Of a stretch of DNA of 64,000 bases, positions 1,101 to 57,560 are shown piece by piece (the stretch's first letter is position 1; each line of letters opens with the position of its first letter). Source of the DNA: Octopus sinensis. Taxonomy: Eukaryota. The position numbers were made by a program, and so were the translations under genes. Location: the NCBI RefSeq assembly GCF_006345805.1, contig NC_043001.1:126728001-126792000 (forward strand). Direction: 5' to 3'. Under the pieces are notes generated by a model. That model saw only the letters and a list, made by a program, of their open reading frames with translations, did no database searches and was not told the origin of the DNA.

Positions 1101-1980
<880 letters not shown>

Positions 1981-12317: not shown

Positions 12318-12383
<66 letters not shown>

Positions 12384-13487
12384 CATCAACAATCAAGGAA
12401 CGGCCATATAGGCCATTCACCCCCTAGAAATAACAGCCAAAGCTTCAACCGCAAATAAAATCATTCCGTAAACCAGGAGAAAATTTAAAAAACATTTACC
12501 CTGTAATTTCTTATACGATGCACCGTTTCATCTGCTGTTTAATGGTAAACTAACCTGATTAAATTAAATCAAGCCAATCTTCCATAGGCCCTCAGATTCT
12601 TCAGTAAGAAATAGCCAAGTCGGAACAGATATTTTCACGAGGCATTTCCGACCCTGCCAAGGTAATATCTGACCTAAAATTTTCAAATCATCGCACTCGC
12701 GCCAAATTTATCGGCAGCAAATAAATATAAGCCGTCGATTCCATTACGGAATTAACCAGAAAATTCATAATTAATCAATATAGGGTGGCAAAAAATTTTG
12801 TAGAATTTTTTTGCCACCAGCGGCCTAGTGGGAAAAAATTAAATAGTCATAGACCATTTTTAAGTTCAACATCAACAATCAAGGAACGGCCATAATAGGC
12901 CATTCACCCACTAGAAATAAATCCAAAGCTTCAACCGCAAATAAAAATCAATTCCGTAAACCAGGAAAAATTTAAAAAACATTTACCCTGTAATTTCTTA
13001 TACGATGCACCGTTTCATCTGCTGTTTAATGGTAAACTAACCTGATTTATATTTATTTGCTGCCGATAAATTTGGCGCGAGTGCGATGATTTGAAAATTT
13101 TAGGTCAGATATTACCTTGGCAGGGTCGGAAATGCCTCGTGAAAATATCTGTTCCGACTTGGCTATTACTTACTGAAGAATCTGAGGGCCTATGGAAGAT
13201 TGGCTTGATTTAATTTAATCAGGTTAGTTTACCATTAAACAGCAGATGAAACGGTGCATCGTATAAGAAATTACAGGGTAAATGTTTTTTAAATTTTCTC
13301 CTGGTTTACGGAATTGATTTTTATTTGCGGTTGAAGCTTGGCTGTTATTTCTAGTGGGTGAATGGCCTATTGGCCGTTCCTTGATTGTTGATGTTGAACT
13401 TAAAAATGGTGTATGACTATTTAATTTTTTCCCACTAGGCCGCTGGTAGCAAAAAATTCTACAAAATTTTTTGCCACCCTATATTGA

Positions 13488-13495
<8 letters not shown>
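12384..13495. repeat. Tandem plus inverted triplication of a ~450-bp unit
   Basis: Blocks X-Y (12384-12730), T-X (12767-13045), then reverse complement of T-X-Y (13046-13495). Confidence 0.9.
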
Positions 13496-13531
<36 letters not shown>

Positions 13532-13655
13532 AAGAATTCCAACCTTGTCTGATTTTCACGTTTTATTTACAATCTTATAATGATATATTATAAGATAATA
13601 TATTATAATTGAATAAAATAAAATGAAATAGTAGAATGTTAAATATTCATTCTGT

Positions 13656-13699
13656 TGAACTAGTACTTTCATGCATTGAATTCTGCAATCTTCGGTTCA
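13656..13699 (-). ncRNA. Hammerhead motif in PLE copy B (one base missing from the C-run at the stem I/core junction)
   Basis: Same as copies A and C except TTCGGTTC versus TTCGGGTTC. Confidence 0.55.
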
Positions 13700-14190
13700 T
13701 GTAGTAGTGTTGACAGTCATGCTTCACATTTTTGACTGTAGCAAGATGATTGATTCTGTGCTATAAATACAGCTGGGTAGGCTCCAGAGTGCTAGGTTTT
13801 GCAAACTGTATTCTGACCAATCAGTGTGTAGTATCACTCAATTACTTAAGCTGATTGGTTGGTTGAGCTGATTGGTTAGAGGCGTCACGCTTTTTGGACA
13901 TGTCAAGAGTCCTGTATCTTGACCCTGGCCGAAGCAAATTGTTGGGTTATTTTTAGAAATGTTGTAAATATCCTTTGTCAGAGATTTTTATATTTCAATT
14001 GTCATCATCATCATTGTCAGCACCTTAATTATTGTTGCTAGTGGTGATGGTTATGGCAATAGAACTTTTAACCCTAATAAGATAATTTTCCTGCTGCTAT
14101 CTTCGTCTTGATCACCTTTAGTATTGTTGTTGTTGTTAGTGGTCATGGTCGTAGCAGTGGAAGTAATACCTCTAAGTATTATTATTATTA

Positions 14191-17100
14191 TTATTGCTTA
14201 TTTAGCTTGGGTTCGAATTTATCAATAAAATTCTTTTCTCTGATTTTCCTCTCTCGATTTCACTTGGGCTGTGTAATTTGAAAATGGAAATATTATATAT
14301 ATTTTCCGACCACATGTTGCTAGGTGGTTACTCAAAGGTATCTGACGGACCTCTGGGTCTCTAATCTGTTGCCGGTGTACACGTGAGCGTTCTAATAGTG
14401 CGTTTCCCGTCTGACCTACATATATTTCTTCACAATTTGGGCATTTGATGCAGTAAATTAAATTTCTGCTTTTGCAGTTCATATTCGCGTTTGTGAATAT
14501 TTTCCCGGTTTTTGTGTTTATATATTGACCGGTATGTATGAATTGGCATGTGCCACATCGGCTTCATTGCATTTAGATACCGTGAATGTTTGGTCTTTGT
14601 TGCTGAGGTCAAATTTTGCCTTTGTTAGTAATGTTTTCAAGTTTTTAGGCTGTCTTTTACTAAGCACCATAGCTCGATCCGTGATTATGTCTTTAATATT
14701 CATTACTTTGGGCAATGATTGGTAGGTTTGCTTTGGCAATGTTGAAGATATTCTGGTGACATGGGTTGTGTGTCACTATGAATGGTATGACTTGTTCTTG
14801 TTTTCCTCTTCCTTGGGTTGTCCTAAGTTGTTGTATAGGTATTTTTATAGCCCGCTGTATGCCATTTTCTATAAGTAGAGATGGGTATTTTTGTTTGAGC
14901 AAAAATTCTCTTAGTTCTATTAGGCGTTTGTTCCTGATATTTGCATCTTCTACAATAGTACAAATTCTTCTGGCTAGGCAGTATGGGATGTTACTTTTGT
15001 ATGTGGTGGATGGCACGACTTAAAATTTAGGTATTGATGTGTGTCTGTGTGTTTATAGTATATATCTGTGGTGATGGTGGTGTCTTTTTTAATTACCATT
15101 ATATCCAGGAATGGTAATTGGTACTACTCATCTCCTTTGTAAATTGGAGAGATGGGTGTAGGTTGTTCATGAGGATATTGAACTCTTCCAGAGTATTTAG
15201 AGATTCTGTCCAGATTATGAAACAGTCGTCTAGGTATCTCTTCCATGCCTTTTCAATATACTTTCTAAACCCAGTGCCATAGTTTTACCCTCCACCTCTT
15301 GGTAGAGTTGTTCTTCTAAGTATCCCATTACAGAGTTGGCGTAACGGAGCAAACCTCGTTCCCATCGCCGTGCCTCTAATTTGGATGTAATTCTTTCCAT
15401 TGAAGAAGAATTGTTATTTTCTAGAATAGCTTGACTGTGTCTAATATAAAAGGCACTGTGAATCTGCTGGAATCACTTCTCTATGTTTTTCTAACCAGTA
15501 TTTAATCGCCTTTATTCCTAAATCGTGTGGAATATTGGTGTAGAGGCTTACCACATCAAAACTTAGTAAAACTGATTTGGTTTCTGTTGTTTTGGGAAGA
15601 TGGGACAAAGTCGATGTCATCCCTGATGAAACTTGGTATGTAAGTACATAGTGGTTTCAAAACAATGTCAATAAAATGCTTAGACGGTGTGTAGGGCATG
15701 CTGGACCAGCTATAATAGGTCTAAGTTTTAGGTCTTTTGGATGTAATAATTTTATATTTATGTACTCACTTTCTTGTTCTTTTACTGCCTGTTGAATGTT
15801 TTTTGATTTGTGTATTTTTGGTAAGCCGTAGAAGTTGCTGGGTTTTTGGTTCAAAATTGGTGATGTAGTCTTTTTCATTATCCGTAAGTGAGTTGTGGTG
15901 TGTTTGAATCAGGTTGTTGATCTTTTTCATGATGTGGTGGTCTATATTTGCGGGTATTTCACAATAGAAGGTTGTATCCTTCAGTTGGTCTTCAACCAAA
16001 TCCTTATAGTATTCGGTATCCATAATAACAATTGCACCACCTTTATCTGCTTGTTTAATTATTATTGTTTGATCGTTTTGTATACGTTTACATGCAGACA
16101 TCTCTGATTTGCTAATGTTTGGCCTAACATTGGTATTGCGTCTAGGGGAATTTAGACAGGATATCAATGTATTGGTCAAGGGTAGTTATTTCTTCCTTTT
16201 GGTGGGGTGAAATTTGATTTATTCCTTACTAGGGATTCATCAATCTCATTACTTTTGTTAGCGAAGATTCTACAAGGCGTAATTTTCGACAGAATTTTTG
16301 GATATCCTCCTTTAAATTCTTGGTGGTTGGCTGTTGGTGTAGGTGTGAATTTCAGTCCTTTTGACAGAAGTTGGATTTCATCATTGTCAAAATCTCTTTT
16401 TGATAAATTAATTATTTTAGGATCTATACGTTCAGTTGTTTGGGGTATGTTTCCTCTTGGATTTTTTCTTTCTCCGGTGTTTGTTGTCCTGACGTAAAAA
16501 AATGGATTTTTTCTGGTTATGATTTATATTCCTGATTTTTTGCTTGATGAATTTTGCGTTTTGGTTGTGGTACTTTACTTGGTTTCGTTATGTTTTCTCT
16601 GTCTTGTTTTTTTGGTATTATGTATGCTACTTTTCATTTCTTGTTAGCATTGTTTTTTAACCACCTGGAGAAATGATCTGGGTTTACTTCTAGATCTAGA
16701 TCGGTTTTTTGTCCAGTTTTCTTGTGGTAATCTCTGTTGAGGTCTTGAAAATGATCTCCTGTTATTTCTACTGCTAATGGTCTGTTTCAACAATATCTAT
16801 TTTGTTTGTGCTTTTTGTTCATGTTGTGTGCATTGGGGGTTTGCATACAAAATGGGAAGAGTTCTTACCGTAGTTCGTCTTCGATTCGTGGTGAAACAGG
16901 TGTTCATGTTGCCACGTGTTCTGGTGTATGTTGCGTTGGTGAGGTTGTCCACTTTTAATGCTATTTCTCGGAGCTCTGTTGTCTTTACCGTAGTTTGTAG
17001 CATATTTGTCGAGAAATAATTTGTTTCCGCTGCCAAAACTTTCTTGATCTGCTTTCTTCTTTTGAGATATCTCTGATCCATAGTTCTCGCATTTTTTCTG

Positions 17101-17275
17101 CTATATTGCCGGTCGTTAGTTTTGGATATTTCATCTCTGATTTGATCATCGATAGCTTCGTATTTGGCTTTGTAGCGGGATTGTTTAGACAGGGTAATGG
17201 AGATGTCGGTCCTGAATTTTATCAAACTAAGGTCCCATCGAAGTTTAGTTTCTTCCTCTGGTTCTCCTGCAATTT
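14191..17275 (-). pseudogene. PLE polyprotein (RT + GIY-YIG endonuclease), frameshifted as assembled
   Basis: Motifs SFDVVSLYTNIPHDLG, GTAMG, WKRYLDDCFIIW, NLIYCIKCPNCEEIYVGQTG, REKNFIDKFEPKLNKQ*; split across ORFs 16797-17312, 15766-16179, 15657-15878, 14693-15016, 14518-14739, 14222-14482. Confidence 0.92.
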
Positions 17276-18668
17276 CTTTAATGGTAATTAAAAAAGACAC
17301 CACCATCACCACAGATATATACTATAAACACACAGACACACATCAATACCTAAATTTTAAGTCGTGCCATCCACCACATACAAAACGAACATCCCATACT
17401 GCCTAGCCAGAAGAATTTGTACTATTGTAGAAGATGCAAATATCAGGAACAACCCTAATAGAACTAAGAGAATTTTTGCTCAAACAAAAATACCCATCTC
17501 TACTTATAGAAAATGGCATACAGCGGGCTATAAAAATCCTATACAACAACTTAGGACAACCCAAGGAAGAGGAAAACAAAACAAGTCATACCATTCATAG
17601 TGACACACAACCCATGTCACCAGAATATCTTCAACATTGCCAAAGCAAACCTACCAATCATTGCCCAAAGTAATGAATTAAAAACATAATCACGATCGAG
17701 CTATGGTGCTTAGTAAAACAGCCTAAAAACTTGAAAACATTACTACACAAAGGCAAAATTTGACCTCAGCAACAAAGACCAAACATTCACGGTATCTAAA
17801 TGCAATGATAGCCGATGTGGCACATGCCAATTCATACATACCGGTCAATATATAAACACAAAACCGGGAAAATATTCACAAACGCGAACGAATGAACTGC
17901 AAAAGCAGAAATTTAATTTACTGCATCAAATGCCAAATTGTGAAGAAATATATGTAGGTCAGACGGAAACGCACTATAGAACGCTCACGTGTACACCGGC
18001 AACAGATTAGAGACCCAGAGGTCCGTCAGATACCTTTGAGTAACCACCTAGCAACATGTGGTCGGAAAATATATATAATATTTCCATTTTACAAATTACA
18101 CAGCCCAAGTGAAATCGAGAGGAAAATCAGAGAAAAGAATTTTATTGATAAATTCGAACCCAAGCTAAATAAGCAATAATAATAATAATATACTTAGAGG
18201 TATTACTTCCACTGCTACGACCATGACCACTAACAACAACAACAATACTAAAGGTGATCAAGACGAAGATAGCAGGAAAATTATCTTATTTAGGGTTAAA
18301 AGTTCTATTGCCATAACCATCACCACTAGCAACAATAATTAAGGTGCTGACAATGATGATGATGACAATTGAAATATAAAATCTCTGACAAAGGATATTT
18401 ACAACATTTCTAAAAATAACCCAACAATTGCTGCTTCGGCCAGGGTCAAGATACAGACTCTTGACATGTCCAACAAAGCGTGACGCCTAAACCAATCAGC
18501 TCAACCAACCAATCAGCTTAAGTAATTGAGTGATACTACACACTGATTGGTCAGAATACAGTTTGCAAAACCTAGCACTCTGGAGCCTACCCAGCTGTAT
18601 TTATAGCACAGAATCAATCATCTTGCTACAGTCAAAAATTGTGAAGCATGACTGTCAACACTACTACA

Positions 18669-18713
18669 TGAACCCGAAGATTGCAGAATTCAATGCATGA
18701 AAGTACTAGTTCA
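18669..18713 (+). ncRNA. Hammerhead motif in PLE copy C, CCGAAGA core
   Basis: TGAAC/GTTCA stem I, TGCA/TGCA stem II with U-U at its base, GAAA, palindromic GTAC stem III, CUA site. Confidence 0.7.
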
Positions 18714-19000
18714 ATCAGAATGAATATTTAACATTCTACTATTTCATTTTATTTTATTCAATTATAATATATTCTTATAATATATCATTATAAGATTGTA
18801 AATAAAACGTGAAAATCAGACAAGGTTGGAATTCTTTTTATTAATATATTCTTCTATACACAATCACACACACCCATATATATATATATTATATATATAT
18901 ATATATACATACATATATATACATATTTATATATATATGTACATATGTATATCTGTATATATATATATATATATATATATACATAGCATACATATACATG

Positions 19001-19802: not shown

Positions 19803-20200
19803 GGCGCGGGAGTGGCTGTGTGGTAAGTAGCTTGTTTACTAACCACATGGTTCTGGGTTCAGTCCCACTGCGTGGCACCTTGGGCAAGTGTCTTCTACTA
19901 TAGCCTCGGGCCAACCAAAGCCTTGTGAGTGGATTTGGTAGACGGAAACTGAAAGAAGCCCGTCGTATATATGTATATATATATGTATGTGCGTGTATGT
20001 TTGTGTGTCTGTGTTTGTCCCCCTAGCATTGCTTGACAACCGATGCTGGTGTGTTTATGTCCCCGTAACTTAGCGTTTCGGCAAAAGAGACCGATAGAAT
20101 AAGTACTGGGCTTACAAAGAATAAGTCCCGGGGTCCAGTTGCTCGATTAAAGGTGGTGCTCCAGCATGGCCGCAGTCAAAATGACTGAAACAAATAAAAA
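19803..20200 (+). mobile_element. SINE family A, full length
   Basis: A box TGGCTGTGTGG, B box GGTTCAGTCCC, internal microsatellite, GGTGCTCCAGCATGGCCGCAGTC tail. Confidence 0.92.
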
Positions 20201-20518
20201 TTAAAATATATATATATATATATTACTCTTTACCTGCTGGTGACTGCGTTTGTATACCCATTTATATTTCATTCACACATTTCTTTTAAAACTATCCATC
20301 CGTATCCCAGAAAAACTAATGGTTTGTTCATGTGTTTATTTTAAAATGAATATTCCTAGTTATAATTTCAAGAGTTGTCGGTATCAACTTAGGTTGTGTA
20401 TTGTCATGCTAATCTCCGGCTGAGTTATTCTTCAGTGACAACTTACGTAAAATTTGCACGACGGAGAATTCTCGTCATAGGTACGCAATATTTACCCTTT
20501 TAACGATTAAATATACAC

Positions 20519-25786: not shown

Positions 25787-27372
25787 GTATAAGGGTGAAA
25801 AGGAACACACGAGTTGATATATATGAAAAAACAAGTCAAAATAAAAATGCTAAAAATAATTTTATAGTGAACATTTCAGTACCGGTTTCAGTCATTTTGA
25901 GACCTTTTCAACTGTAACGATTAAATAATTAAATTTAGAAAAATTAGAAGAAAAAGTTTTTTTAAAGAATATTTCTATAGTAGTGTTCAGATTTAAGTGG
26001 CATTCTGCCTTTCTCTGACTCCCTTGTTTGCACTTGTGTGTTCGAGGTAGTTGTGAGTTCTTGGTAGGGTAGTAGAGGAAGAAGGCTGGTGAGGAAAGGG
26101 GGGTGGGAGAATCTGGGAGTGCCCTGATGGTCGTATTTTGAATGGTCAGTGGCGGCTGGCAGTCTCAGTTCAATTCAGGAGAATATTTATATTGACGGGC
26201 TTGTTTATAGAATTAGCGTAGGTGTTATACTAAAAAACATTAGTGACAAGTTAAGGGGTAGGGGTGGGAAGTAGAAGAAGAAGAAGAAGAAGAAGAAGAA
26301 GAGAGAGAAGGAGGAGAGAAGGAGAAGATGACGATGATGGTGATGGTGGTGATGATTATGACGACGATGATGATGATAATGATGATGATGAAGAAGAAGA
26401 AGAGAAGAAGAAGAAGAGGAGGAAAGGAGAAGAGGTGGATGGTGGTGAGATGATGACGACGATGATGATGATAATGATGATGATGAAGAAGAAGAGGAAG
26501 AAGAAGAAGAAAAAAAAACAGAGAAGGGAGAATATGAATGGGTGTAAGTATAGCTATGAAGGGGCTGATTAGTAATGGATTCTATGGAGTGTAGTATTGT
26601 GTGTGTATATATATTTTTTTCCTTTTATTCTAAAGTTGAGGTATATTAATTGTTTGTCGTAGACCGTTAAGAAGTGGCTTGTATTTTGTAATAAAGAGAT
26701 TTTCTTTACTTATTCGTTGTCTCGAGGTTGTATCGTCCCTAAATTGGTAGAGGGGGAAAATTCTGAAGTTTGGTGTTTTTTTGTTGGCGCAAGTATCTAT
26801 GTGTTGGCTAAAAGCTATTTTTCTGTTTGGGGAATTTTTATCTGGGATCTGTGCAGGGCCATTCGTTTACGCAAGCCATTATTTGTTTGGCCTATGTACT
26901 GCTCTTGACACCCGGAGCAGGTTAGTGAGTATATTAGGTTCTCCGAAGCACATGTGAAGTTGCTTTTCACTGTAAACCGTTGTCCCTGTTTGAAGGAGAA
27001 CTCAGAACCCTCGATTAGATAGTCGCATATCCCGCAATTGGGTCTTCCACATTTTTTTACTGTCGGCTTCTGTGTTGAAGAGTGAATTCGGGCTTGTGTA
27101 AGGAGACTTTTCATGGATCTAGGCTGTCTTTTGCTTTTTATGATCGTGTGTGTTTGGAGGATTGTGTTCATTCTGTGGTCTTTTTTTAGGAGGGGTATGT
27201 TGTGGAGGATGGTGTCGAAGGCTTCGTTAATGAGAGGGTTGTGTGTGGAGATGTGTGGTAAGGCTTTTGGTTGTAAGTTTTTCTTTGATTTGGGATGTCT
27301 CAGTTCCTTGATGTTAAGTTGAAGGGCACGTTGAATGCACTTGTCAATAAGTGAAGGTGGATAGTTCCTGGT
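25780..27372 (-). mobile_element. Second Penelope-like family, 3' fragment (GIY-YIG plus 3' UTR)
   Basis: CGRPNCGIC...NLIYSLTCSGCQEQYIGQTNNGLRKRMALHR in ORF 26815-27468; trinucleotide-rich UTR; terminal HHR. Confidence 0.9.
25877..25914 (-). ncRNA. Hammerhead motif with U3-A8 core variant
   Basis: CAG-TTGAAAA-GGTC(TCAAAAT)GACT-GAAA-CCGG-TA-CTG. Confidence 0.65.
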
Positions 27373-27667
27373 GATATATATATATATATATATATATAGT
27401 AGAAATATGTTACGAAAAGAAAATATAAAATATACGTTGAAATGTAAGGGTAAAATATGAAAAATCAACGAAAATGCATATTGCAGATAGAAAAAGGCTA
27501 TTTATGACAGGTAGTGACAAATATATACATTTAGATTGACTGAGGTAGTAATACGAGTCATAAAAGTCATTATTATGAGATGATTATAAGATGATAATAA
27601 AGTAAGAGAACAAAACGAACCAGTGGTTTACGCGAAGGCTATTCATCGTCAGATGAATATAGATGTG

Positions 27668-32509: not shown

Positions 32510-34959
32510 CAGGGGTTCTCAACCATCGTTTATCTATGTACCCCTTTGATTACTATTTTATTCTGATGGACCCCCACAGTCATTCCATATAAAAAAACTA
32601 GTTTCATAGAAACCTCTACTGATATTAACCCTTTTCTGCTTTTTAGGTAAGTAGAATCGTGCTTCTCCTGCCCTTGGGTGAAGTCCTCCATTCATATCGA
32701 AATCCTTTCTAGTTCTTCAGTCTAGATTTGCTAATTCAGTTTCTGTCCAATCCACAAAAGCTGCTGAGTATCTAAGTAATGATACTGCCCAAGAATTTAC
32801 AGCCTTCACTAGATTCGGACCATTTAGCTTTGATTTCATTATATTCCTCACACTTCTGATGTACTCCTTCTCAATTTTCGTTTTCATTTCTATAGTTAGT
32901 AATCTGTCAGATTCTAAAACTCCTAGATACTTATAATGATTTTAATGTCTGACCATCTGGTAATTGGATGCCTTCACTGTTGACTACTTGTTCCCTTTTC
33001 ATGACATATATTGCATACTTTTCTATGCCAAATTCTTGCCTATATCTTTGCTGAAGTGCCTTACAGTCTGTATTAAAGAATCTATCTCTTCTTGATTCTT
33101 GCTCAAAAGCTTCAGATCATCCATGACGAGCAAATGGTTAAGTTTTCCCTTACTATTTCTGAAGTGATACTCTTCATTTGCCTTCCTTAATACTAAACTG
33201 ATGGGGATCAAACTTAAAGAGGTGGTGGTTCGGAGCACCACCTCTTTAGGGTGGCCCCTAATCCAGTTGATAGTCTTTACAGAAGTGTCGATGACTTTTT
33301 TCAAATTTGGAGGCAATGTTTTCAACGTCAAGGCATGACGATAAAAGAAACAGTGAGTGCCTTGTAAGTGCGGATTCTCCCGCTTCATCAGCGTAAAAAA
33401 TCCAGATTTATTTCCTAGCATAGCAGGGACAGCGTCAGTATACATAGAACCAATAATTTGGATAGCTAATTCATGCTTTGCAAAAAGTTTTTCACAAACT
33501 GGAACATATTTTCTCTTTTCGTGGTTGTTATCAGATCTTCACAGAAGTGGAAATCTTTCTTTACGGCACCAAGATGGACGTACATCACTAATGCGATGAG
33601 TTGTTTGCGACTTGAAACATCAGTTGTTTCGTACAACTGAAGAGAAATTTTCAAGGGACTAATCTTGACATATGAGATAACTTGACCCAAAATATCCGAA
33701 CTCAAATCACCAATTCGTCTCTGAATAACATTATTTGATAGCGGCGCTAATTCCAGCTTCTTCCTTGCTTCTTTTCGCAGAATAAATGTTGCCATTTCTA
33801 ATGCACATGCTTTGATAAGTTCTTCTCCAATTGTATAGGGCTTCTTCGACTTGGCTATTTTATACGACACTTGGTATGAAGCCTCCAGCAGTGGATTGTC
33901 AGCAGATATAAAACCTAATTTTGGAAAGGTTGCTCGAGAATCAAAACGGGCTCTTGTAGCTTTTCAACGGCTCTTCAACATCATGGGCTACAGCATCGGC
34001 TCCACCATGCCAGTTGATGAAGTGTTCTTACAGCTTAGACGGTTTCACATTTGCGTTGGAAAACACTGTGTCACAAAGTATGCACTGTGGTCATTGCAAA
34101 TCCTCAGTTTTTCCCGTGCAAGTCAAACCAAAATGCACATAGTCATCATTCCATTTCCTTTTTTTTTCTTGTTTTGAGGTGATGAAGAGTTAATATGATT
34201 AAATTATGATCTGAAAAGGAAATAAAAATATGGATAAGGTCGATTGGAAGAAAAACGGGAAATCTAACACACTGACAATAATACTATTATATCCAAGAAT
34301 AAGTATGATAATAATACTATTAATAAAAAGACAAAAAACTGCTGGCTTTCAATTCCCTAATCTAACGGGCTAGACTAAATTTGAACACACAAAAATGGTT
34401 AAGAGCTATGTTACTCACAATTATATAATATTCAAATTGATACCACAGCATTAATTTCACGTCTGCTTCATATATTTTCACAATTACCTGGTCTTTAATA
34501 AAGATACCTTTTTCACAAAATGAACACATAACAAAGTTATCGTAATCAGCCGTATAGGTAAATGATTTTTTAAAAAGTTGTGAAACAATATTCACGACTG
34601 AATTATGATAACTGTTATTTGCAAGTCACGTTGTAAATGTAATTTCCTCAAACATGTGTGATCAAAGGCGTTCGGTATGCTGTACCTTCACGACAATCGT
34701 TTTTCGCACTTTGCTATTGTTAGCTGTAAATCGATTTGCCAATGTGTTTTTCTGGAGACAGCCAGATATCACGATATATTATTTCCTCCTTTTCTTGACA
34801 AAACATTTACGTTTTCTCTTACAATTTGTTGCAAGAGAAAACGGAAAAAACTACAGGAGAGTATTATACAAATTAAGTGCCTGGTTGCAAGGCTGGACAT
34901 GGCTGGAATGCTGTCTCGCATTCCTTGGGGGTGCGAGCACCCCTAGTTGGGAAACACTA
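32510..34959 (-). mobile_element. hAT (Buster/Charlie-type) transposon remnant, composite
   Basis: Ends CAGGGGTTCTCAACC and AGTTGGGAAACACTA; transposase pieces KPYTIGEELIK, PLSNNVIQRRI, THCFFYRHAL (33225-34190); flanking 8-mers both fit NNNTANNN but differ, so the ends may come from separate insertions. Confidence 0.8.
32640..33225 (-). mobile_element. R4/Dong-like LINE RT fragment inside the hAT interval
   Basis: LSLIPISLVLRK...NHLLVMDDLKL...YKYLGVLES...AVNSWAVSLLRYSA. Confidence 0.8.
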
Positions 34960-35104
34960 GTCTAAAAGGAACAATAGGCGATTGGGGCCCAATTTCTTTA
35001 AAAGCAACTGAAACGATTTATACGATTTTAAATATCGTATAATTGTGGGAAACAACTTCAATGTTTATGTGCTTCTAAAGTGTTTAATGATCGAACGTTT
35101 CCAG

Positions 35105-35259
35105 GAATGGGTGTGTGGTAAGTAGTTTGCTTATCAGCCACTTGGTTCTGGGTTCAGTCCCACTGCGTGGCACCTTGGGCAAGTGTCTTCTACTATAGAC
35201 TCGAGCCGACCAAAGCCATGCGAGTGAATTTGGTAGACGGAAACTGAAATAAGCCCGTC

Positions 35260-35332
<73 letters not shown>

Positions 35333-39499: not shown

Positions 39500-40553
39500 T
39501 TCAAGGCTGGTGATTATAATGTATTTCTGCATTACTCCAGATTGTTCTTCTACATTAGTTTTCGTCTAGTCTTACACACACACACCACCACCACCAACTT
39601 CACTAGAATGTTCCTCGTGCCAATCATTAACAACTTTAGCTGTGTGAATTGGTACATTATCCTGAAAGATTGCATCTCACTCCGGAAACAGTTCCGCAAC
39701 CATAGGATGAATTTGATCAGATAAAATGTTTGAATAGTCTTGACTATTAATTCTGTCATGAAGGGAAACCATTGGGCTGGTGGATTTCCAAGATATAGCC
39801 TCCCAGTTCATCACAGATACTCCTCCATGTTTAACAGTTGCAAGAAGGCAGTCTGGGTCAAATGCTTCTTTTGGCTATCTCCACAAGTATCGCCGGCCGG
39901 TGGTCGGAAATAAGATAAAGGATGACTCGTCCAAGAAAATAGCATTCTTCCACTGCTCTAGGTATCAATTCTATAGGTTTTTACTCCACCTTAAACGCTT
40001 TGCACCGTTTGTTTTTGAAAGTAGTGGTTTTCTGATTGCAGCCCTCCCGTGAAATTCAACTTTGCACAGCTCCCAGCGAACAGTTTTTGCGGAAATTGGG
40101 TTCGCAAGATGGTCATTAAGCTCAGCAGTAATTTTGGGAGCTGTACTTTTGTGATCCTTTCTAATAATTCGTGTAAGAGTCCGACGGTCCCTATCTGAAA
40201 GTTTTGGTTTTTTTCTGGAGTTTTGTTTCGACGAGGAGGTTTTTCCCTCTTTCTCAAAGGCTGTCATTACTTTCGAGACAGTACTTCTTGTTACACCAAA
40301 CAATTCGGCTGTTTTCGTTATGCTAACGCCTGCCATAACAAGCACCAACAATTTGATCTCTCTGAAAGTCCGATAGATCTGTCATGTTAATGAATTTTAA
40401 TTACCGTTTTATGATGATATCTAAAAACAAACAGCAATTTTAGCAAAACATATTAAGCAACACTAATAATAAATCAAAAACAAAAAAAAAAATAAGCGTT
40501 TGACGGTTTTATAGATATTTCAAAATTATCATACTATGATGCTAGGTGTTTCC
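39500..40553 (-). mobile_element. Tc1-family transposon remnant
   Basis: ORF 39971-40351 (ITKTAELFGVTRSTVSKV...GRAAIRKPLLS); downstream DESS and FQDNVPIHTAKV motifs; one terminus missing. Confidence 0.85.
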
Positions 40554-43624: not shown

Positions 43625-44015
43625 GTGGCTGTGTGGTAAGTAGCTTGTTTACCAACCACATGGTTCTGGGTTCAGTCCCACTGCGTGGCACCTTGGGCAA
43701 GTGTCTTCTTCTATAGCCTCGGGCCGACCAAAGCATTGTGAGTGGATTTGGTAGACGGAAACTGAAAGAAGCCCGTCGTATATATGTATATATATATATG
43801 TGTGTGTGTTTGTGTGTCTGCGTTTGTCCCCCTAGAATTGCTTGACAACCGATGCTGGTGTGTTTATGTCCCCGTCACTTAGCGGTTCGGCAAAAGAGAC
43901 CGATAGAATAAGTACTGGGCTTACAAAAGAATAAGTCCGGGGTCGAGTTGCTCGATTAAAGGCGGTGCTCCAGCATGGCCGCAGTCAAATGACTGAAACA
44001 AGTAAAAGAGTAAAT
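43625..44015 (+). mobile_element. SINE family A, full length
   Basis: A/B boxes, core and tail complete. Confidence 0.92.
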
Positions 44016-44164
44016 GAGAGTAAAGAGTAATACATACACACACATTCATACACATACATACATACATACATACATACATACATACATACATACATACATA
44101 CATACATACATACATACACACACACACAAACACACACACATAATATATATACATGTATATATTC

Positions 44165-49014: not shown

Positions 49015-49430
49015 AGAGGCGCAGGCATGTTTGTGTGGTAATGAAGCATGCTTTTCAACCATGAGGGTTTCAGGTTCAGTCGCACTATGTGCCACTTTGT
49101 GTAAGTGTCTTCTACTATAACTCCGGACTGACCAATGACACGCGGGTGAATTTGGTTGATGGAAACTGTGCAGAAGCCCATCGTATACATATGTGTGTAT
49201 ATATGTGTCTGTCTGTCTTTGTGCTTATGTGTGCGTTTTCGCCCACTCGTTCACAGCCGGTGCTGGTTTCTTTACATTCCATAACTTAGCAGCTCGGCAA
49301 AAACGAGCCGCGATAATAAATACAAGACTTTAAAATAAGTAAGTCTTGGAAGCGTTTGTTCGACTAAACCTTTCAGGATGGTGCCCCAGCATGGCCACAG
49401 TTTAATGACGGTAAAAGAAGTATAAGGTAA
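49015..49430 (+). mobile_element. SINE family A, diverged
   Basis: Colinear head, core and GGTGCCCCAGCATGGCCACAG tail. Confidence 0.7.
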
Positions 49431-49467
49431 AAGATAACTACTATGTGTGTGCACGCGCGCATGTGTT

Positions 49468-49519
<52 letters not shown>

Positions 49520-49520
<1 letters not shown>

Positions 49521-50135
49521 CTGTATATATAAAAGGCAGGATGTGTGTGTGAGTGTGTGTGTGTGTGTGTACATTTTGCACGTCCACAAATTAGGATGCA
49601 TGTCGCTCCAACTTTAGGAGGACATTCGTCATGAACCTAGCTGTATTTTCGTCAACTTATTTTTTGTTTACCAGAGGCACCAGCGAATAGCAGTAAAAAT
49701 AAATTTTCAATCAAAACTTTTAACAATTTTCAAGTCGGAGAAATCACCGTTGTTTGCAAACAGGAGTTAAGTCCCCTTCTAGCGACGAGTAAGTTTTTGT
49801 TGACTTTTGTTGTTTTTTTTCCATCGAAGAAAAAATTGTTTTGTTGATATACGGGCAACACACGCGCACACACTCACAAACACGCACACACACACATACA
49901 CACACACACACAAACACACACACACGAACATGTATGCATACAAAAAACATGTATGCTATGGGTGTATGTACGTACGTGCGTGTATGTGTGTGTTGCCCAT
50001 ATATATATATAGAAAAACAAATTTCAACGGATTTCGCCCAAATTTAACGTCGATATTACTTAGATTGGTTTGAAATAAAGAACTTGATTAGCTTAATAAT
50101 CCTAACTTAATCGCGGGCAAATCTGGATTATACTG
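49520..50135 (+). mobile_element. Helitron-like non-autonomous element, decayed 3' end
   Basis: 5' TCTGTATATATAAAAGG plus (TG)n; 3' CGGGCAAATCTGGATTATACTG resembles 20890-20911 but lacks CTAG. Confidence 0.5.
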
Positions 50136-50194
50136 TATATATATATATATATATATGCATCAAATGAAATAAAAAACAGAACACAAAGGATGTC

Positions 50195-50286
50195 GCGGTA
50201 CACGTGTTTCAATCTTTATAAAATAACCTATTCTTACATCAATGTGTAATCGACATAACAGATAGTTTAAAGCTCTCTTCAGCCGC
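50195..50286 (-). ncRNA. Type I hammerhead, canonical core, extended stem II (left arm)
   Basis: GCGG-CTGAAGA-GAGCTTTA...TAAAGATT-GAAA-CACGTG-TA-CCGC; one stem II mismatch. Confidence 0.75.
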
Positions 50287-50477
50287 ATGCAATTGCTATA
50301 CCAAACAATTACATCACATGAAATTATGAAAAATCCGAAAATATACATTTGGTATTATCTATAATGGTGGGTATATTGAGTTTCACTGAGAAAGTATGTT
50401 TGCAAATCTTCATAATCAAATATGTGTAGGGTAGCATGGGACTTCAAACATCCGTCCATACTCTATCATCAGACATT

Positions 50478-53305
50478 GCATTATTGGGAAATCTCCCAAA
50501 ATTTCCGGCAATTTCCGACCTATCCGGCAACCTCCGGCAATCTTTTTTTGAAAGATTTTAGAAAAGTTTTCCCCAAAAGTTTCTGAAATTTTTTCCGAAA
50601 TATTTTAGAAAATTTTCTCCAAAATTTTTTAAATCTCCCAAAATGCTATTTCACCTTCCTCCGGCTATATCCGACAATCTCCGGCAATCTCCGGCTATCT
50701 CTGGCCATCTCCGGATATCTACGGCAAATTCCGGTAATTTCCGGCAATTCCCCTCAATCTCCGGCAATTTCCGACAAATTCCTATCACTTCCGGCAATCT
50801 CCGAAAATTTCAGGCAATTCTCGGTAATCTCTGGCAATTTCCGTTAATTTCCGGCGTATCCGACAATTTCCGGCAATATCCGGCTATCTTTTTCTGAAAG
50901 ATTTTTTGAAAATTTTTCCCAAAAACTTTTGAAAATTTTCCCCAAAGATTTTAAAAAATTTTCCCCAAAAATTTTTGAAAATTCTTGGCAAAAAATTTTC
51001 AAAATTTTTGGCCCAAAGTTTTTCCCAAGAATTTTTCAAATCTTTCTCCAAACATTTTTGAAAATTTTTCCATGCATCATTGGGAAATCTCCCAAAATGC
51101 TATTCCACCAATCACCGGCAATCTCCGGCCATCTCCGGCAATTTCCGGTAATTTCCGGCAATCTCCGGCAACTTCCAGTAATTACCGGCAATCTCCAGCA
51201 ATCTCCAGTAATCTCCGGCAATTTCCGGCATCTCCGACAATTTCCGGCAATGTTGGGCAATCTTTTGTTGAAAGATTTTTTGAAAATTTTACCCAAAAGT
51301 TTTTAAAACTTTTTCACAAAAATTTTTCAAAATGTTTCCCAAAAATTTTCGAAACTTTTCCCCAAATTTCTTCAAAATTTTTCCTAAATGTTTTCAAAAT
51401 TTTACCCCAAAATTTTTGAAAAACCTTCTCCAAAATTTTTTTAAATTTTCCAAAAAAGTTTTAAAAAATTTTTCCGAAATATTTTAGAAAATTTTCCCCA
51501 ATAATCTTTGAAAATTTTTCGCTGCCTTATTGGGAAATCTCTCAAAATGCTATTCTGCCTATCTCCAGCAATCTCCGGTTATCTCTGGCAATCGCCGGAT
51601 ATCTCCGGCAATCTCCCGCAATTTCCGGCAATCTCCAAAATTTTGGGAAATTTTCGTTCAAAATCTTTCAAAATTTTTCCCCAAAAATATTTCAATAATT
51701 TCCCCCAAAATTTTTCTAAATTTTACCACAAAATTTTGGAACTCTTCCCCGAAAATTTTTGAAAATTTTCCCCTAAAGTTTTTCAAAATTTTTCGAAATA
51801 TTTTAGAAAATTTTCCCAAAAAAGTTTTGAAAAATTTTCCCTGCATTTTTGGGAAATCTCCCAAAATGCTATTCCGCCTATCTCCGACAATCCTCGACTA
51901 TCTCTGGCAATCTCTGGATATAACCGGATATCTTTGGCAATCTCCGGCAATTTCAGGCAATTCCCGCCAATCTCTAGCAATTTCCGGTAATCTCCGATCA
52001 CTTCCGGCAATTTCCGGCAATCTTCAAAGTTTTTCGAAATCTTCCCCCCAAAAGTTTCAAGATTTTCACCAAAAATTTTTCGAAAATTTTCCACAAATTT
52101 TTTGAAAATCTTCCCCAAAAATTTTTGAAAATTTTCCCCAAAAGTTTTTCAAAATTTTTACGAAATATTTTAGATTTTCCCAAATATTTTTGAAAATTTT
52201 TCCCTGCATTATTGGGAAATCTCCCAAAATGCTATTCCGCCCATCTCCGTCAATCTCTGGCTATCTCTGGCAATCTCCGGATATCTTCGGCAATCTCCGG
52301 CAATTTCCGTCTAACTCGGGAAATTTCCGGAAATTCTCGGTAATCTCCGGAAATTTTCGGTAATTTCCGGCATATCCGACAATTTCCAGCAGTCTCGCCT
52401 GTCTTTTTCTGAAAGATTTTAAAAAATTTTCCTCAACAGTTTCTGAAAACTTTTTGGAAAATTTACCCCAAAAATTTTTGAAAAAATTTTGAAAATTTTC
52501 CCCAATAATTTTTGAAAATTATCCCCCAAAATTTTTCAAAACTTTTTGGGAAATTTTTCACAAAAATTTTTGAAAATTTTCCCTAAAAACTTTTGAAAAT
52601 TTTCTATGAAAATTTTTTAAAATTCTTGCTAAAAAATTTTCAAAATTTAGCCCAAAACCTTTCCCAAGAATTTTTCAAAGTTTTCACCAAAAATTTTTGA
52701 AAATCTTTCTCCAAAATTTTTCCCTGCATTACTGGGATATCTCCCAAAATGCTATTCCGCCAATTTCCGGCAATCTCCGGCTATCTCTGGAAATCTCCGG
52801 CTATCTCCGGTAATTTCCGGCCCTATCCGTAAATTTCGGTAATTTCCAGCAATTTCCGTCAATTTCTGAAAATTTTCAGCAATTTCCGGCCATTTCTTGT
52901 CATTTGCAGCAATTTCCGCTATATCCGAGAATTTCCGGCAATTTTCCCGAAAACGTTTTGAAAATTTTCACGAAAAATTTTCCCCAAAAGTTTTTCAAAG
53001 TTTCTCCCAAAAATTTTGGAGAATTTTCCCAAAAAACTTTTGAAAATTTTTCTCTGCATTATTGGGAAATCCCCAAAATGCTATTCCGCCAAACTCCGGC
53101 TATCTCCGGTAAACTCCGGCTATCTTCGACAAATTCCGACAGTCTCCGGCAAACTCCTTCAATTTCCGGCAATTTTTTCCCAAAAATTTTTGAAAATTTA
53201 CAACAAACATTTATGAAAATTTTCACAAAAATTTTTGAAATGTTTCCCCCAAATGTTTTGAAAATTTTCCCAAATATTTTGAAAATTTTCCCCAAAAATT
53301 TTTGA
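50478..53305. repeat. Higher-order satellite, 8 units of ~150-520 bp
   Basis: Anchor GCATTATTGGGAAATCTCCCAAAATGCTATT at ~50478, 50631 (partial), 51074, 51524, 51843, 52206, 52726 and 53056; each followed by a (TYTCCGGCAA)n-like block and an AAAATTTT-rich block. Confidence 0.95.
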
Positions 53306-53378
53306 AATACCAAATGTACATTTTCGGATTTTTCATAATATCATAATGTGATGTAATTCTTTGGTATAGCAATTTCAT

Positions 53379-53470
53379 GCGGCTGAAGAGAGCTTTAAAC
53401 CATCTGTTGTGTCGATTACACATTGATGTAAGAATAGGTTGTTTTATAAAGCTTGAAACACGTGTACCGC
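53379..53470 (+). ncRNA. Type I hammerhead, canonical core, extended stem II (right arm)
   Basis: GCGG/CCGC stem I, CTGAAGA, 8-bp GAGCTTTA/TAAAGCTT stem II, GAAA, palindromic CACGTG, GUA site; predicted cut after 53466. Confidence 0.82.
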
Positions 53471-53891
53471 GACATCCTTTGTGTTCTGTTTTTTATTTCA
53501 TTTGATGCATATACCCTCTCACCTCTGCTACTAACTGGCATATACAGGTGCTTACACTTATCAAGTATTCTCCCTGAATTTACTTATATATATATACTGT
53601 ATATAAATTCCCTACTGGGAATGACCAAGTTTAAAAATCTGCTGGATCTCACTCATAAGGGAATCTTACATTGCTTATTAACTCTATATTTGGAAGGACT
53701 CATATTAATCTCTGTTGGACTTTTGGATTTTACTCAAAGGATATTGGAATATTGCATATATACCATTGTGCCTATAAAACAGATTTACAACTCAATACCC
53801 ATACATATCTGGCATCTATTTTCGTTCCTCCACCCCACTCACTATTTTGTATCACATCGAAACTAACTATGACTTAATTTTCCTCCACACC

Positions 53892-53943
53892 GTCTCCGAT
53901 GAAGGGATATTATTAATTTATATCCTAGAAACAGCTGTAAGAC
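53892..53943 (+). ncRNA. Type I hammerhead, CCGAUGA core
   Basis: GTCT-CCGATGA-A-GGGATAT(TATTAATTT)ATATCCT-A-GAAA-CAGCTG-TA-AGAC. Confidence 0.72.
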
Positions 53944-54011
53944 CTTCTATCTATAAATGCTCTAATATCTATACAGCCTTGGTTTTTTAATCTTATTACG
54001 CAAAAAATTCT

Positions 54012-54042
<31 letters not shown>

Positions 54043-54882
54043 ACAGCTTATGAAAATACACAAACGAACAATTGTATTAGTATGGCGCTCAATATAAATA
54101 AAACAAGTCTTATCGAGCCTATAAGAGAAAAAATGCGTGCAGTAGCTAACGAATCAACACACACACATACATACGCACATGCATACGTGCGCATATACAT
54201 ACATACGCAGATGCGTACTTACGTGCATATACACATACATACATACGTACACACATACATACGTATATATAACCTGAACTAACTAGATGTAAGGGAGAAA
54301 AGGAAAAATAAAGATAAATAATAGTAAAACAAAAGTTTTGTGATATAGAGATAAGTGACTGATAATAGGTTTTAGAGTTTTGTCGTGGGGGTTAGGGTCG
54401 CAAATCACTTCCTAGTTTCGGCGGGTGAGGTTGAAATTTGATATTGTTGTGATGAGTGGTCAGTCTACATCTATCCATCACTACAGGTTTATAGCTTTAA
54501 GTTTATAGTGTGTGTGTGCGTGCTTATACACACATACATACATACGTACACACATGCATACACACAGGCGTACGTACGTACATACATACATACATGCATG
54601 CATGCATACATGCGTACATACATAGATACACACACACACATACGTACATATATATAACGAACTAACTGTTACTTTCTCAGATGCAGCACGGATTTTTGTC
54701 AGTGAGCAGGTCGCGGTCTTAAAGCGACGAAAATATTTTGACAAATTAAACTTAAATGTTGAAGTGAATCGAGCGGCTTTTGTGTGTTTCTTAAATGGCT
54801 TATAAACACCTTCCACGCTGCAATTGTTTTCGTTTCAGCACACGATCTCAGATCAAATCACTTGCTATGCAAGTACATCTCC

Positions 54883-57201: not shown

Positions 57202-57560
57202 GACGCAGGAGTGGCTGTGTGGTAAGTAGCTTGCTTACCAACCACATGGTTCCGGGTTCAATCCCACTGAGTGGCATCTTGGGCAAGTGTCTTCTACTAT
57301 AGCCTCGAGCTGCCCAAAGCCTTGTGAGTGGATTTGGTAGACGGAAACTGAGAGAAGCGCGTCGTATATATGTATATGTATATGTATATATGTGTGTATG
57401 TGTATGTTTGTGTGTCTATGTTTGTCCTCCTAACATCGCTTGACAACCGATGCTGGTGTGTTTATGTCCCTGTAACTTAGCGGTTCGGTAAAAGAGAACC
57501 GAGAGAATAAGTACTAGGCTTACAAAGAATAAGTCCTGGGGTCGATTTGCTTGACTAAAG
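57202..57560 (+). mobile_element. SINE family A, 3'-truncated
   Basis: Complete head and body; stops before the GGCGGTGC tail. Confidence 0.88.

What the first reader, a model, noticed from the sequence alone, without database searches (positions are those of the whole stretch)
50152..53513. Satellite array packaged between two inverted hammerhead-bearing ends: candidate ribozyme-bounded non-autonomous element
Seen: ~205-bp inverted repeats (~95% identical, differing mainly by substitutions, so not a simple read fold-back) each contain a complete canonical-core hammerhead pointing outward. They enclose 120 bp of unique DNA and a 2.8-kb composite satellite with no credible ORF. Known: PLE 3' ends carry minimal type I hammerheads with palindromic stem III, and PLE insertions can have an inverted, truncated second copy. 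The same head-to-head geometry is visible in the coding PLE at 13524-18875. Inference: what looks like a foldback MITE may be a PLE-mobilised RNA whose cargo is satellite DNA, giving a ribozyme-dependent route for satellite dispersal. I cannot establish novelty without a search.
Basis: partly seen in the sequence, partly recalled or inferred. Interest (0 to 1): 0.9.

Follow-up and report, generated by a model that had tools for sequence, protein, structure and literature searches.

The report
Non-coding Penelope-type insertion carrying a satellite
A 3.35-kb non-coding insertion in a (TA)n microsatellite has the usual layout of a Penelope-like retrotransposon (a long copy plus an inverted short copy of its hammerhead-bearing 3' end), but its body is a satellite array instead of a gene; this is an unusual variant of a known kind, and only one copy could be examined.

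Summary
Two inverted arms (50156-50356 and 53304-53509; 94.7% identical) each carry an outward-pointing type I hammerhead core with a minimal palindromic helix III. They enclose 120 bp of unique DNA and a 2.83-kb composite satellite with no credible ORF. Such motifs are not chance: 3 strict hits in the window against 0.01 expected.

The geometry is the standard Penelope-like element (PLE) insertion signature: a long copy with an inverted 5'-truncated copy at its 5' end, inserted in (TA)n. The window holds two further examples, a frameshifted RT/GIY-YIG PLE (13529-18839) and a second, unrelated hammerhead-bearing non-coding element (12383-13495). Six of seven PLE-type ends abut (TA)n tracts.

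The most likely reading is one PLE-type retrotransposition of a non-coding RNA made of leader, satellite and hammerhead tail.

"Ribozyme-bounded" is misleading. The two hammerheads lie on opposite strands, so any transcript carries only one. The motif is a dimer-type minimal hammerhead with a non-canonical 10.1-11.1 pair, and Rfam does not detect it.

No other copy was found in the window or in any searchable collection. Satellite-tail linkage and ribozyme dependence therefore remain untested. Verdict: new variant of a known kind, moderate interest.

The parts
50136..50155 (.). (TA)10 microsatellite abutting the left end; presumed target tract
   Evidence: Sequence; (TA)>=5 tract list
50156..50356 (-). 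Left arm: inverted, 5'-truncated copy of the 3' terminal module
   Evidence: 94.7% identical to 53306-53513 in reverse complement
50199..50282 (-). Hammerhead motif of the left arm: core intact, one C>A change breaks a helix II pair; predicted cleavage 50199/50198
   Evidence: Relaxed descriptor scan; alignment; monomer MFE does not form the hammerhead
50357..50476 (.). 120 bp of unique sequence. Either the 5' leader of the long + strand copy, or extra upstream sequence of the - strand copy
   Evidence: No other match in the window; assignment is by analogy with PLE-A
50477..53303 (+). Composite satellite of 8 higher-order units (142-520 bp). Each unit is an anchor CCCTGCATTATTGGGAAATCTCCCAAAATGCTATTCCGCC, a 10-mer array CTCCGGCAAT and a 23-mer array TTTTCCCCAAAAATTTTTGAAAA. 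All units are in one orientation
   Evidence: TRF; anchor scan and unit table; ORFs have no Pfam match
53304..53509 (+). Right arm: 3' terminal module (tail) of the long copy
53383..53466 (+). Hammerhead motif of the right arm: CUGAAGA, long helix II, GAAAC-ACGU-GUA. Helix I strands are 53379-53382 and 53467-53470 (GCGG/CCGC; a U.G pair 53378/53471 can be added). Predicted cleavage 53466/53467
   Evidence: Scans; monomer MFE is hammerhead-shaped; dimer MFE is a double hammerhead with an 8-bp helix III
53510..53513 (.). TATA on the right outer side, matching the (TA)n on the left. It is either a short target-site duplication or the remainder of the target tract
   Evidence: Alignment of the outer ends

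Best explanation
This is one insertion of a non-coding, Penelope-like-element (PLE)-type retroelement into a (TA)n microsatellite.

The long copy lies on the + strand (50357-53509). It consists of a ~120-nt leader, a 2.8-kb satellite body and a ~205-nt 3' module with a minimal type I hammerhead. An inverted copy of that same 3' module (50156-50356) sits against its 5' end. That is the arrangement PLE integration typically leaves.

Inferred mechanism:
1. A source copy is transcribed.
2. A PLE reverse transcriptase with GIY-YIG endonuclease, supplied in trans, nicks (TA)n. The two coding PLE remnants in the window have the Zn-knuckle linker of the Neptune/Nematis kind.
3. The enzyme copies the RNA from its 3' module.
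4. The still undefined second step of PLE integration creates the inverted truncated partner.
5. The two arms, identical at birth, have since diverged by about 5%.

The hammerhead is a hallmark of the 3' module, not a boundary device. It sits 43 nt inside the 3' end and only one copy lies on each strand. Its 2-bp helix III with an ACGU loop means it could cleave only when paired with a second sense copy, in tandem or in trans. At this locus it is probably silent.

Shown here: the anatomy, the non-random hammerhead motif, the (TA)n association, and the parallel geometry in neighbouring PLE elements. Inferred: the RNA intermediate, mobilisation in trans, and carriage of the satellite in the template.
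For: 1. Hammerhead motifs occur in both arms, with 0.01 expected by chance per window.
2. Helix III is palindromic, and the dimer MFE is a textbook double hammerhead (-55.5 against 2 x -21.9 kcal/mol). Helix II is long and helix I short (4-5 bp), as described for PLE min-HHRs (PMC4209133).
3. The same geometry is seen in PLE-A. Its long - strand copy (13529-17278) has RT motifs, a CxxC knuckle and a GIY-YIG domain. An inverted truncated copy (17279-18839) adjoins it, with arms 97.3% identical. The geometry recurs in the unrelated hammerhead-bearing element 12383-13495.
4. Published PLE features match: an inverted 5'-truncated copy at the 5' end, (TA)n bias linked to the CX2-5CxxC linker, and hammerheads in pLTRs (PMC8557442). 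Opposite-strand min-HHR pairs 100-700 bp apart were reported in Schistosoma.
5. Six of seven PLE-type ends in the window abut a (TA)>=5 tract, while such tracts cover only 3.2% of the window.
6. Only the outer boundaries are TA-type; the inner arm boundaries are not. This favours one insertion event.
7. Anchor identity among satellite units 2-7 is 81-94%, below the arm identity of 94.7%, so the array predates the arm duplication.
8. The coding PLEs here also carry tandem repeats just upstream of their 3' modules.
Against: - Only one copy exists in the accessible data, so mobility of this composite is unproven.
- The arm shows no sequence similarity to the 3' ends of the two coding PLEs or to the other hammerhead element in the window, so no autonomous partner is identified.
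- The truncation point of the inverted copy falls within about 20 bp of the satellite/tail junction. That would be a ~1% coincidence for a random truncation in a 3.15-kb copy, and it suggests the tail may be a discrete module.
- The 120-bp segment could belong to either copy.
- The hammerhead departs from the family consensus: G.U at 10.1-11.1, no unpaired base after A9, no Rfam hit.
- The age comparison rests on 52-nt anchors, and arrays may mutate faster than unique DNA.
Confidence: 0.55

Rival explanations
1. One-off chimera. An ordinary PLE-type inverted pair of short hammerhead-bearing tails (a ~205-nt solo module, or a 325-nt copy on the - strand plus a 205-nt copy on the + strand) acquired the satellite at its 5'-5' junction. 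This could happen by template switching of the reverse transcriptase onto a satellite transcript during integration, or by later insertion or recombination. On this reading the satellite is not part of a heritable mobile family.
For: The homology between the arms stops at the satellite/tail junction. The 120 bp next to the left arm is absent from the right copy. The tail length (~205 nt) is in the size range of animal retrozyme monomers, 170-400 nt (PMC7229834). In the two neighbouring complexes the inverted copies abut directly, without filler. PLEs are reported to retrotranspose host sequences in trans.
Against: The array begins exactly at an anchor and ends in a 23-mer array that runs smoothly into the tail. 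All units share the tail's orientation. The units are older than the arms by the divergence comparison, which argues against later in-situ growth, though not against capture at the time of insertion.
Confidence: 0.22
2. A DNA-level mobile element (foldback or MITE-like) with ~200-bp terminal inverted repeats and a TA target duplication, moved by a Tc1/mariner-like or other transposase. The hammerhead-bearing PLE fragment has merely been recruited as the repeat.
For: The terminal inverted repeats are near-perfect and TA/TATA lies on both outer sides. There is no ORF. A Tc1-like transposase fragment lies at 39971-40351.
Against: The hammerhead motif in the arms is far from chance. Coding and non-coding PLE elements in the same window show the same inverted layout and the same (TA)n association. 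The arm ends do not match anything else in the window, the Tc1-like region included. TA flanks are equally explained by (TA)n targeting.
Confidence: 0.08
3. Two independent insertions of the same short hammerhead element, in opposite orientation, happen to flank an older resident satellite.
For: The satellite units are older than the arms. The tail could be a complete short element.
Against: Both arms end at the same internal nucleotide. Their inner boundaries lack the (TA)n seen at every other PLE-type end in the window. Both arms would have to be of similar age. Only the two outer sides are TA.
Confidence: 0.05
4. Assembly artefact: a fold-back or chimeric read joined across a satellite.
For: PLE complexes and satellites are known to confuse assemblies.
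Against: The arms differ by 8 substitutions and an indel, and the satellite is unidirectional rather than mirrored.
Confidence: 0.03

Closest known systems
Penelope-like elements with C-terminal GIY-YIG endonuclease (Neptune/Nematis kind) and their complex tandem/inverted insertions
   Same: Inverted 5'-truncated copy against the 5' end of a longer copy. Insertion in (TA)n. Minimal type I hammerhead in the terminal repeat module. Tandem repeats upstream of the 3' module also occur in the coding PLEs of this window.
   Different: No RT/EN ORF or remnant; the body is a 2.8-kb satellite. The tail is not similar in sequence to the coding PLEs at hand. No direct (tandem) pLTR is present.
Animal non-LTR retrozymes (Cervera & de la Pena 2020, PMC7229834; Li et al. 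2026 preprint 10.64898/2026.07.22.740005)
   Same: Non-coding, hammerhead-bearing and presumed to be mobilised by PLEs. The tail length (~205 nt) is within the retrozyme monomer range. They are proposed to derive from PLE terminal repeats.
   Different: Retrozymes are head-to-tail tandems in which every 170-400-nt unit carries a hammerhead and yields a circular RNA. Here the repeated units lack a hammerhead, there is one sense hammerhead per strand, and no circle can be excised. The neighbouring element at 12383-13495 fits the retrozyme pattern better.
SVA (SINE-VNTR-Alu) elements of hominids (own knowledge)
   Same: It may work like one: a composite non-autonomous retroelement whose body is a variable tandem-repeat array, mobilised in trans through a recognised 3' module.
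   Different: SVA uses L1 and a poly(A) tail and has no ribozyme or inverted partner. It is a proven multi-copy family; this is a single copy.
Satellite-carrying DNA transposons: Tetris foldback element of Drosophila virilis, bivalve pearl/Helitron-N elements with internal satellites (own knowledge)
   Same: Terminal repeats or end modules enclose an internal tandem array that can seed satellites elsewhere.
   Different: Those move as DNA and lack hammerheads. In Tetris the tandem repeats are part of the inverted arms; here the array is central and unidirectional.
Opposite-strand min-HHR pairs in Schistosoma mansoni (PMC4209133)
   Same: Two minimal hammerheads close together on opposite strands, attributed to PLE remnants.
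   Different: Those pairs are reported 100-700 bp apart with no satellite cargo described; here they are 3.2 kb apart with a satellite between.

Membership tests
Hammerhead ribozyme, type I, minimal PLE variant (min-HHR) | Catalytic boxes C3-U4-G5-A6-N7-G8-A9 and G12-A13-A14, with a U16.1-H17 cleavage site, in type I order | tested here: met
   CUGAAGA ... GAAA ... GUA|C in both arms; 0.01 such motifs expected per shuffled window
Hammerhead ribozyme, type I, minimal PLE variant (min-HHR) | Short helix III with palindromic 15.2-16.2 and loop 3 (dimer-type) | tested here: met
   ACACGUGU palindrome; the dimer MFE forms an 8-bp intermolecular helix III with swapped helix I; criterion from PMC4209133
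Hammerhead ribozyme, type I, minimal PLE variant (min-HHR) | Conserved G10.1-C11.1 pair and an unpaired nucleotide between A9 and 10.1 | tested here: not met
   The helix II base is G.U with no bulge; the criteria are listed in PMC4209133
Hammerhead ribozyme, type I, minimal PLE variant (min-HHR) | Match to the curated Rfam hammerhead covariance models | tested here: not met
   No hammerhead hit at the gathering score (whole window) or at E<=10 (49500-54200). This is expected for a ~65-nt helix II and a 2-bp helix III, but it is still a failed test
Hammerhead ribozyme, type I, minimal PLE variant (min-HHR) | Self-cleavage | not testable with these tools
   Needs in vitro transcription of monomer and dimer constructs
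Hammerhead ribozyme, type I, minimal PLE variant (min-HHR) | Covariation that preserves the helices across family members | tested here: inconclusive
   Only two copies exist. Four of the 8 substitutions fall in helix II. One pair (C/U at 53401 with G/A at 53441) could be compensatory only after a register shift, and one change breaks a pair
Penelope-like element (autonomous) | ORF with a PLE reverse transcriptase and a GIY-YIG endonuclease | tested here: not met
   The satellite ORFs have no Pfam match and no homologues. The positive control PLE-A does give a GIY-YIG match and RT motifs
PLE-type insertion (autonomous or not) | Inverted 5'-truncated copy adjacent to the 5' end of a longer copy, with 3' ends outward | tested here: met
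   the same layout in PLE-A; description in PMC8557442
PLE-type insertion (autonomous or not) | Microsatellite, (TA)n, insertion bias | tested here: met
   The left end abuts (TA)10 and the right end abuts TATA. Six of seven PLE-type ends in the window abut (TA)>=5 tracts, which cover 3.2% of the window
PLE-type insertion (autonomous or not) | Sequence homology of the terminal module to a coding PLE of the same genome | tested here: not met
Animal non-LTR retrozyme | Head-to-tail tandem units of ~170-400 nt, each with a type I hammerhead | tested here: not met
   The satellite units contain no hammerhead and the two hammerheads are inverted, not tandem
Animal non-LTR retrozyme | Expression as self-cleaved circular RNA | not testable with these tools
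   No transcriptome data
MITE / foldback DNA transposon | Terminal inverted repeats plus a fixed-length target-site duplication | tested here: inconclusive
   Repeats are present. TA/TATA lies on both sides but cannot be told apart from the residual (TA)n target
MITE / foldback DNA transposon | Many copies with invariant ends and a cognate transposase with the same ends | not testable with these tools
   There is no other copy in the window and no host genome in the collections

The most novel reading that the evidence does not exclude
The locus is one member of a mobile family in which a hammerhead-bearing PLE 3' module mobilises a VNTR-like satellite body. That would be an invertebrate, PLE-driven analogue of SVA that seeds the same composite satellite at many (TA)n sites. 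The hammerhead tail would be the recognition or processing signal.
Probability: 0.2. Interest if true: 0.65.

Novelty: new variant of a known kind. Interest (0 to 1): 0.35.

Why it matters
If the composite proves to be a multi-copy family, it would show that PLE machinery can spread whole satellite arrays in trans. That would add a retrotransposition route to the known links between transposable elements and satellite birth. It would also extend the range of non-autonomous PLE derivatives beyond tandem retrozymes.

As it stands, the locus mainly illustrates features of PLE biology that are already described: inverted partner copies, (TA)n targeting and minimal hammerheads in the terminal module. 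It also shows that such complexes can look like foldback MITEs to annotation pipelines.

Tried and rejected
- **Rfam.** Searches at the gathering score (whole window) and at E<=10 (49500-54200) gave no hammerhead, only spurious microRNA-like hits on low-complexity DNA.
- **Copies in the window.** BLAST of the arms, the 120-bp segment and the satellite against the whole window found none.
- **Arm ORF as a proxy for arm copies.** The word-indexed protein search found nothing. The full HMMER scan of 1.84 billion representatives gave one spurious low-complexity hit.
- **Satellite ORF as a proxy.** It found only a Tara Oceans contig that shares the 10-mer minisatellite and nothing else.
- **Exact-pattern DNA scans.** Two scans of metagenome contigs (hammerhead pattern, satellite anchor) and one of viral contigs gave zero matches.
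- **PLE-B endonuclease search, to find the host genome.** Best hits were <=60% identical, on short unnamed metagenome or Logan contigs. The species was not identified, so genome-wide tests were impossible.
- **Similarity between the arm and the second hammerhead element.** Nothing beyond the core.
- **Rejected readings.** Chance motif. Fold-back read artefact (the arms differ). Growth of the array in situ after insertion as the main origin (units are more diverged than the arms).
Full report
**1. What is there**

- The arms are 50156-50356 (reverse strand) and 53304-53509. They align over 208 columns at 94.7% identity, with 8 substitutions and one 3-nt indel.
On the left this TATA is the end of a (TA)10 tract (50136-50155). 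On the right only TATA remains before unique sequence.
- Between the arms lie 120 bp of unique DNA (50357-50476; no other copy in the window) and a 2.83-kb array (50477-53303).
- The array has eight higher-order units of 142-520 bp. Each unit is a ~40-nt anchor (CCCTGCATTATTGGGAAATCTCCCAAAATGCTATTCCGCC), an array of the 10-mer CTCCGGCAAT and an array of the 23-mer TTTTCCCCAAAAATTTTTGAAAA. All units are in one orientation.
- ORFs up to 191 aa run through the array because the repeats lack stop codons. They have no Pfam match. Their only database hit is a marine metagenome contig that shares just the 10-mer minisatellite.

**2. The hammerheads**

Each arm contains, reading outward: GCGG-CUGAAGA, then helix II (an 8-bp base plus an imperfect ~50-nt extension), then GAAAC-ACGU-GUA|CCGC.
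- On the + strand this is 53383-53466, with predicted cleavage at 53466/53467. On the - strand it is 50282-50199.
- A strict descriptor finds three such motifs in the window, against 0.01 per dinucleotide-shuffled window. The left-arm copy is a fourth once a single helix II mismatch is allowed. The motif is therefore not chance.
- Its architecture matches the minimal PLE hammerheads of Cervera & de la Pena (PMC4209133): a long helix II, a 4-5-bp open helix I, and a 2-bp helix III capped by a palindromic tetraloop.
- The predicted minimum-energy dimer is a textbook double hammerhead. It has an 8-bp intermolecular helix III and swapped helix I strands (-55.5 kcal/mol against 2 x -21.9 for monomers).

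Three departures should be stated.
- The 10.1-11.1 pair is G.U rather than the highly conserved G-C.
- There is no unpaired base after A9.
- No Rfam hammerhead model reports it, either at the gathering score for the whole window or at E<=10 for 49500-54200.

The monomer fold is no more stable than shuffles (z = -0.7). With only two copies, covariation cannot be assessed. Catalytic competence is therefore open. This class was reported to cleave poorly in vitro, and only as dimers.

**3. Context in the same window**

Three other PLE-related insertions give an internal control.
- **PLE-A (13529-18839).** The long copy on the - strand (13529-17278) carries RT motifs (SFDVVSLYTNIP, RYLDDCF), a CxxC knuckle and a GIY-YIG domain, all frameshifted. 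An inverted 5'-truncated copy (17279-18839) sits against its 5' end, with arms 97.3% identical over 1.6 kb. (TA)n lies on both outer sides. It carries a hammerhead-like motif with U4 replaced by C (18674-18708).
- **A second non-coding hammerhead element (12383-13495).** It is unrelated in sequence. It consists of 1.6 tandem units (period 487 nt) on the - strand plus an inverted + strand copy. Its hammerhead is well folded (z = -4.4), and (TA)n again lies on both sides.
- **PLE-B.** Its endonuclease ORF is at 26815-27468 (- strand) with a CGRPNCGIC linker, and its 3' end abuts (TA)n near 25790.

Tracts of (TA)>=5 cover 3.2% of the window, yet six of seven PLE-type ends abut one directly. Craig et al. 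(PMC8557442) describe exactly these traits for PLEs:
- an inverted 5'-truncated copy at the 5' end, forming flanking inverted repeats;
- (TA)n targeting linked to the CX2-5CxxC linker of the Neptune kind;
- hammerheads in the pseudo-LTRs.

Opposite-strand min-HHR pairs were already noted in Schistosoma.

**4. Most likely explanation**

By analogy with PLE-A, the locus is one PLE-type insertion.
- The long + strand copy (50357-53509) is leader, satellite and hammerhead tail.
- The inverted truncated partner is 50156-50356.

Three observations favour a single event. Only the outer boundaries are TA-type. Both arms stop at the same internal position. The array starts at an anchor and runs into the tail in the same orientation.

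Anchor identity among units 2-7 is 81-94%, lower than the arm identity of 94.7%. The array therefore probably existed when the arms were created, and it was delivered with the insertion rather than grown afterwards. This inference is weak, because the anchors are short and arrays may mutate faster. The RNA intermediate, trans-mobilisation by a Neptune-like PLE and carriage of the array in the template are all inferences.

**5.

The element is not "bounded" by ribozymes in any functional sense.
- The two hammerheads are on opposite strands, so any transcript carries one sense motif and one antisense copy.
- A read-through transcript would pair the arms into a ~200-bp duplex (-306 kcal/mol) and bury the ribozyme.
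- The cleavage site lies 43 nt inside the 3' end, so the template that was copied had not been cut there.
- Hammerhead function in PLE transposition is unknown, and large PLE clades thrive without it.

"Ribozyme-dependent satellite dispersal" therefore has no support yet.

**6. Rivals**

The main rival is a one-off chimera.
- The truncation point of the inverted copy coincides, within about 20 bp, with the satellite/tail junction. That is roughly a 1% coincidence for random truncation.
- The 120-bp segment could instead belong to the - strand copy.
- The ~205-nt tail is the size of a retrozyme monomer.
- In the two neighbouring complexes the inverted copies abut without filler.
- A template switch onto a satellite transcript, or a later insertion at the 5'-5' junction, would give the same picture without any mobile family.

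The other rivals are less likely, for the reasons given in their entries: a TA-duplicating DNA transposon that uses the arms as terminal repeats, two independent insertions around a resident array, and an assembly artefact.

**7. Searches for relatives**

No second copy was found.
- The window holds none.
- The arm ORF used as a protein proxy found nothing real.
- The satellite ORF found only the unrelated Tara contig.
- Exact DNA patterns in metagenome and viral contigs gave zero matches.
- The closest PLE endonuclease relatives are <=60% identical, on short anonymous contigs. The host genome is thus not in the accessible collections and the species was not identified.

From the sequence, the host is an AT-rich (~35% GC), microsatellite-dense animal genome with PLE, LINE, Tc1-like and hAT-like fragments.

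**8. Comparison and novelty**

Each component is known:
- PLE inverted complexes and (TA)n targeting;
- minimal hammerheads in PLE terminal repeats;
- non-autonomous hammerhead-bearing PLE derivatives, i.e. retrozymes;
- a general link between PLE termini and satellites.

The locus is not a retrozyme, because the tandem-hammerhead test fails. It is not an autonomous PLE, because it has no ORF. It may work like an SVA-type composite, with a tandem-repeat body moved through a recognised 3' module (own knowledge), but a family has not been shown.

My literature searches found no description of a satellite body between inverted hammerhead tails. I rate it a new variant of a known kind and of moderate interest. 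Its value depends on a genome-wide copy survey.

Noticed in passing
window 12383-13495: A second non-coding hammerhead-bearing element, unrelated in sequence. It has 1.6 tandem units (period 487 nt) on the - strand plus an inverted + strand copy, with an exactly identical 268-nt core (12463-12730 / 13047-13314) within 96-98% identical copies. Hammerheads lie at 12604-12514 (-) and 13173-13263 (+), with an 8-bp helix I, a palindromic helix III and fold z = -4.4. (TA)n lies on both sides. It fits the animal retrozyme / PLE pseudo-LTR pattern better than the target does.
   Followed up: partly
window 18674-18708 (+) and mirror near 13660-13694 (-): The coding PLE (13529-18839) has a hammerhead-like motif 131 nt from its 3' end with C instead of U at core position 4 (CCGAAGA ... 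GAAAG-UA-CUA|GUUCA) and a 5-bp helix I. It may be an inactive relic or an undescribed core variant.
   Followed up: no
window 25790-27468: A third PLE remnant on the - strand has a CX5CX2C linker and a GIY-YIG domain. About 270 bp of (CTT/CAT)n lie in its 3' UTR, and its 3' end abuts (TA)n. PLE-A likewise has (AAT)n/(CAA)n upstream of its 3' module, so tandem repeats at this position recur in the PLEs of this genome.
   Followed up: partly
window 53304-53308 and 53511-53515: The 5-nt string ATACC that starts the tail recurs just after the element's 3' end (GATGCAT|ATACC). It could be chance, microhomology at integration, or the first bases of a second tandem unit copied from a more-than-unit-length or circular template.
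   Followed up: no
L001 765-944 (Tara Oceans metagenome contig, ERZ908233): The same 10-mer minisatellite, CTC(C/T)GGCAAT, occurs in an unrelated marine eukaryotic contig next to exon-like sequence that, by eye, resembles a matrix metalloproteinase (not tested). Nothing else of the element is shared.
   Followed up: partly
window 49020-49435: A ~400-bp dispersed repeat, possibly SINE-like, lies just upstream of the element. At least six diverged copies (~70-77% identity) occur elsewhere in the window, e.g. 43630-44017, 57204-57559, 19803-20210 and 35102-35281.
   Followed up: no
window 50659-50889 and the other 10-mer arrays: On the reverse strand the 10-mer arrays read ATTGCCGGAA/ATTGCCGGAG, i.e. 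phased CCGGAA cores that resemble ETS-type binding sites. The 23-mer has phased A5/T5 tracts typical of bent satellite DNA. Any significance is speculative.
   Followed up: no
window 1362-1775, 33023-33870, 39971-40351: Fragments of other mobile elements, judged by eye and not tested: a C-terminal LINE RT-like ORF, hAT-like ORFs and an N-terminal Tc1-like transposase ORF. No host gene was recognised in the window.
   Followed up: no
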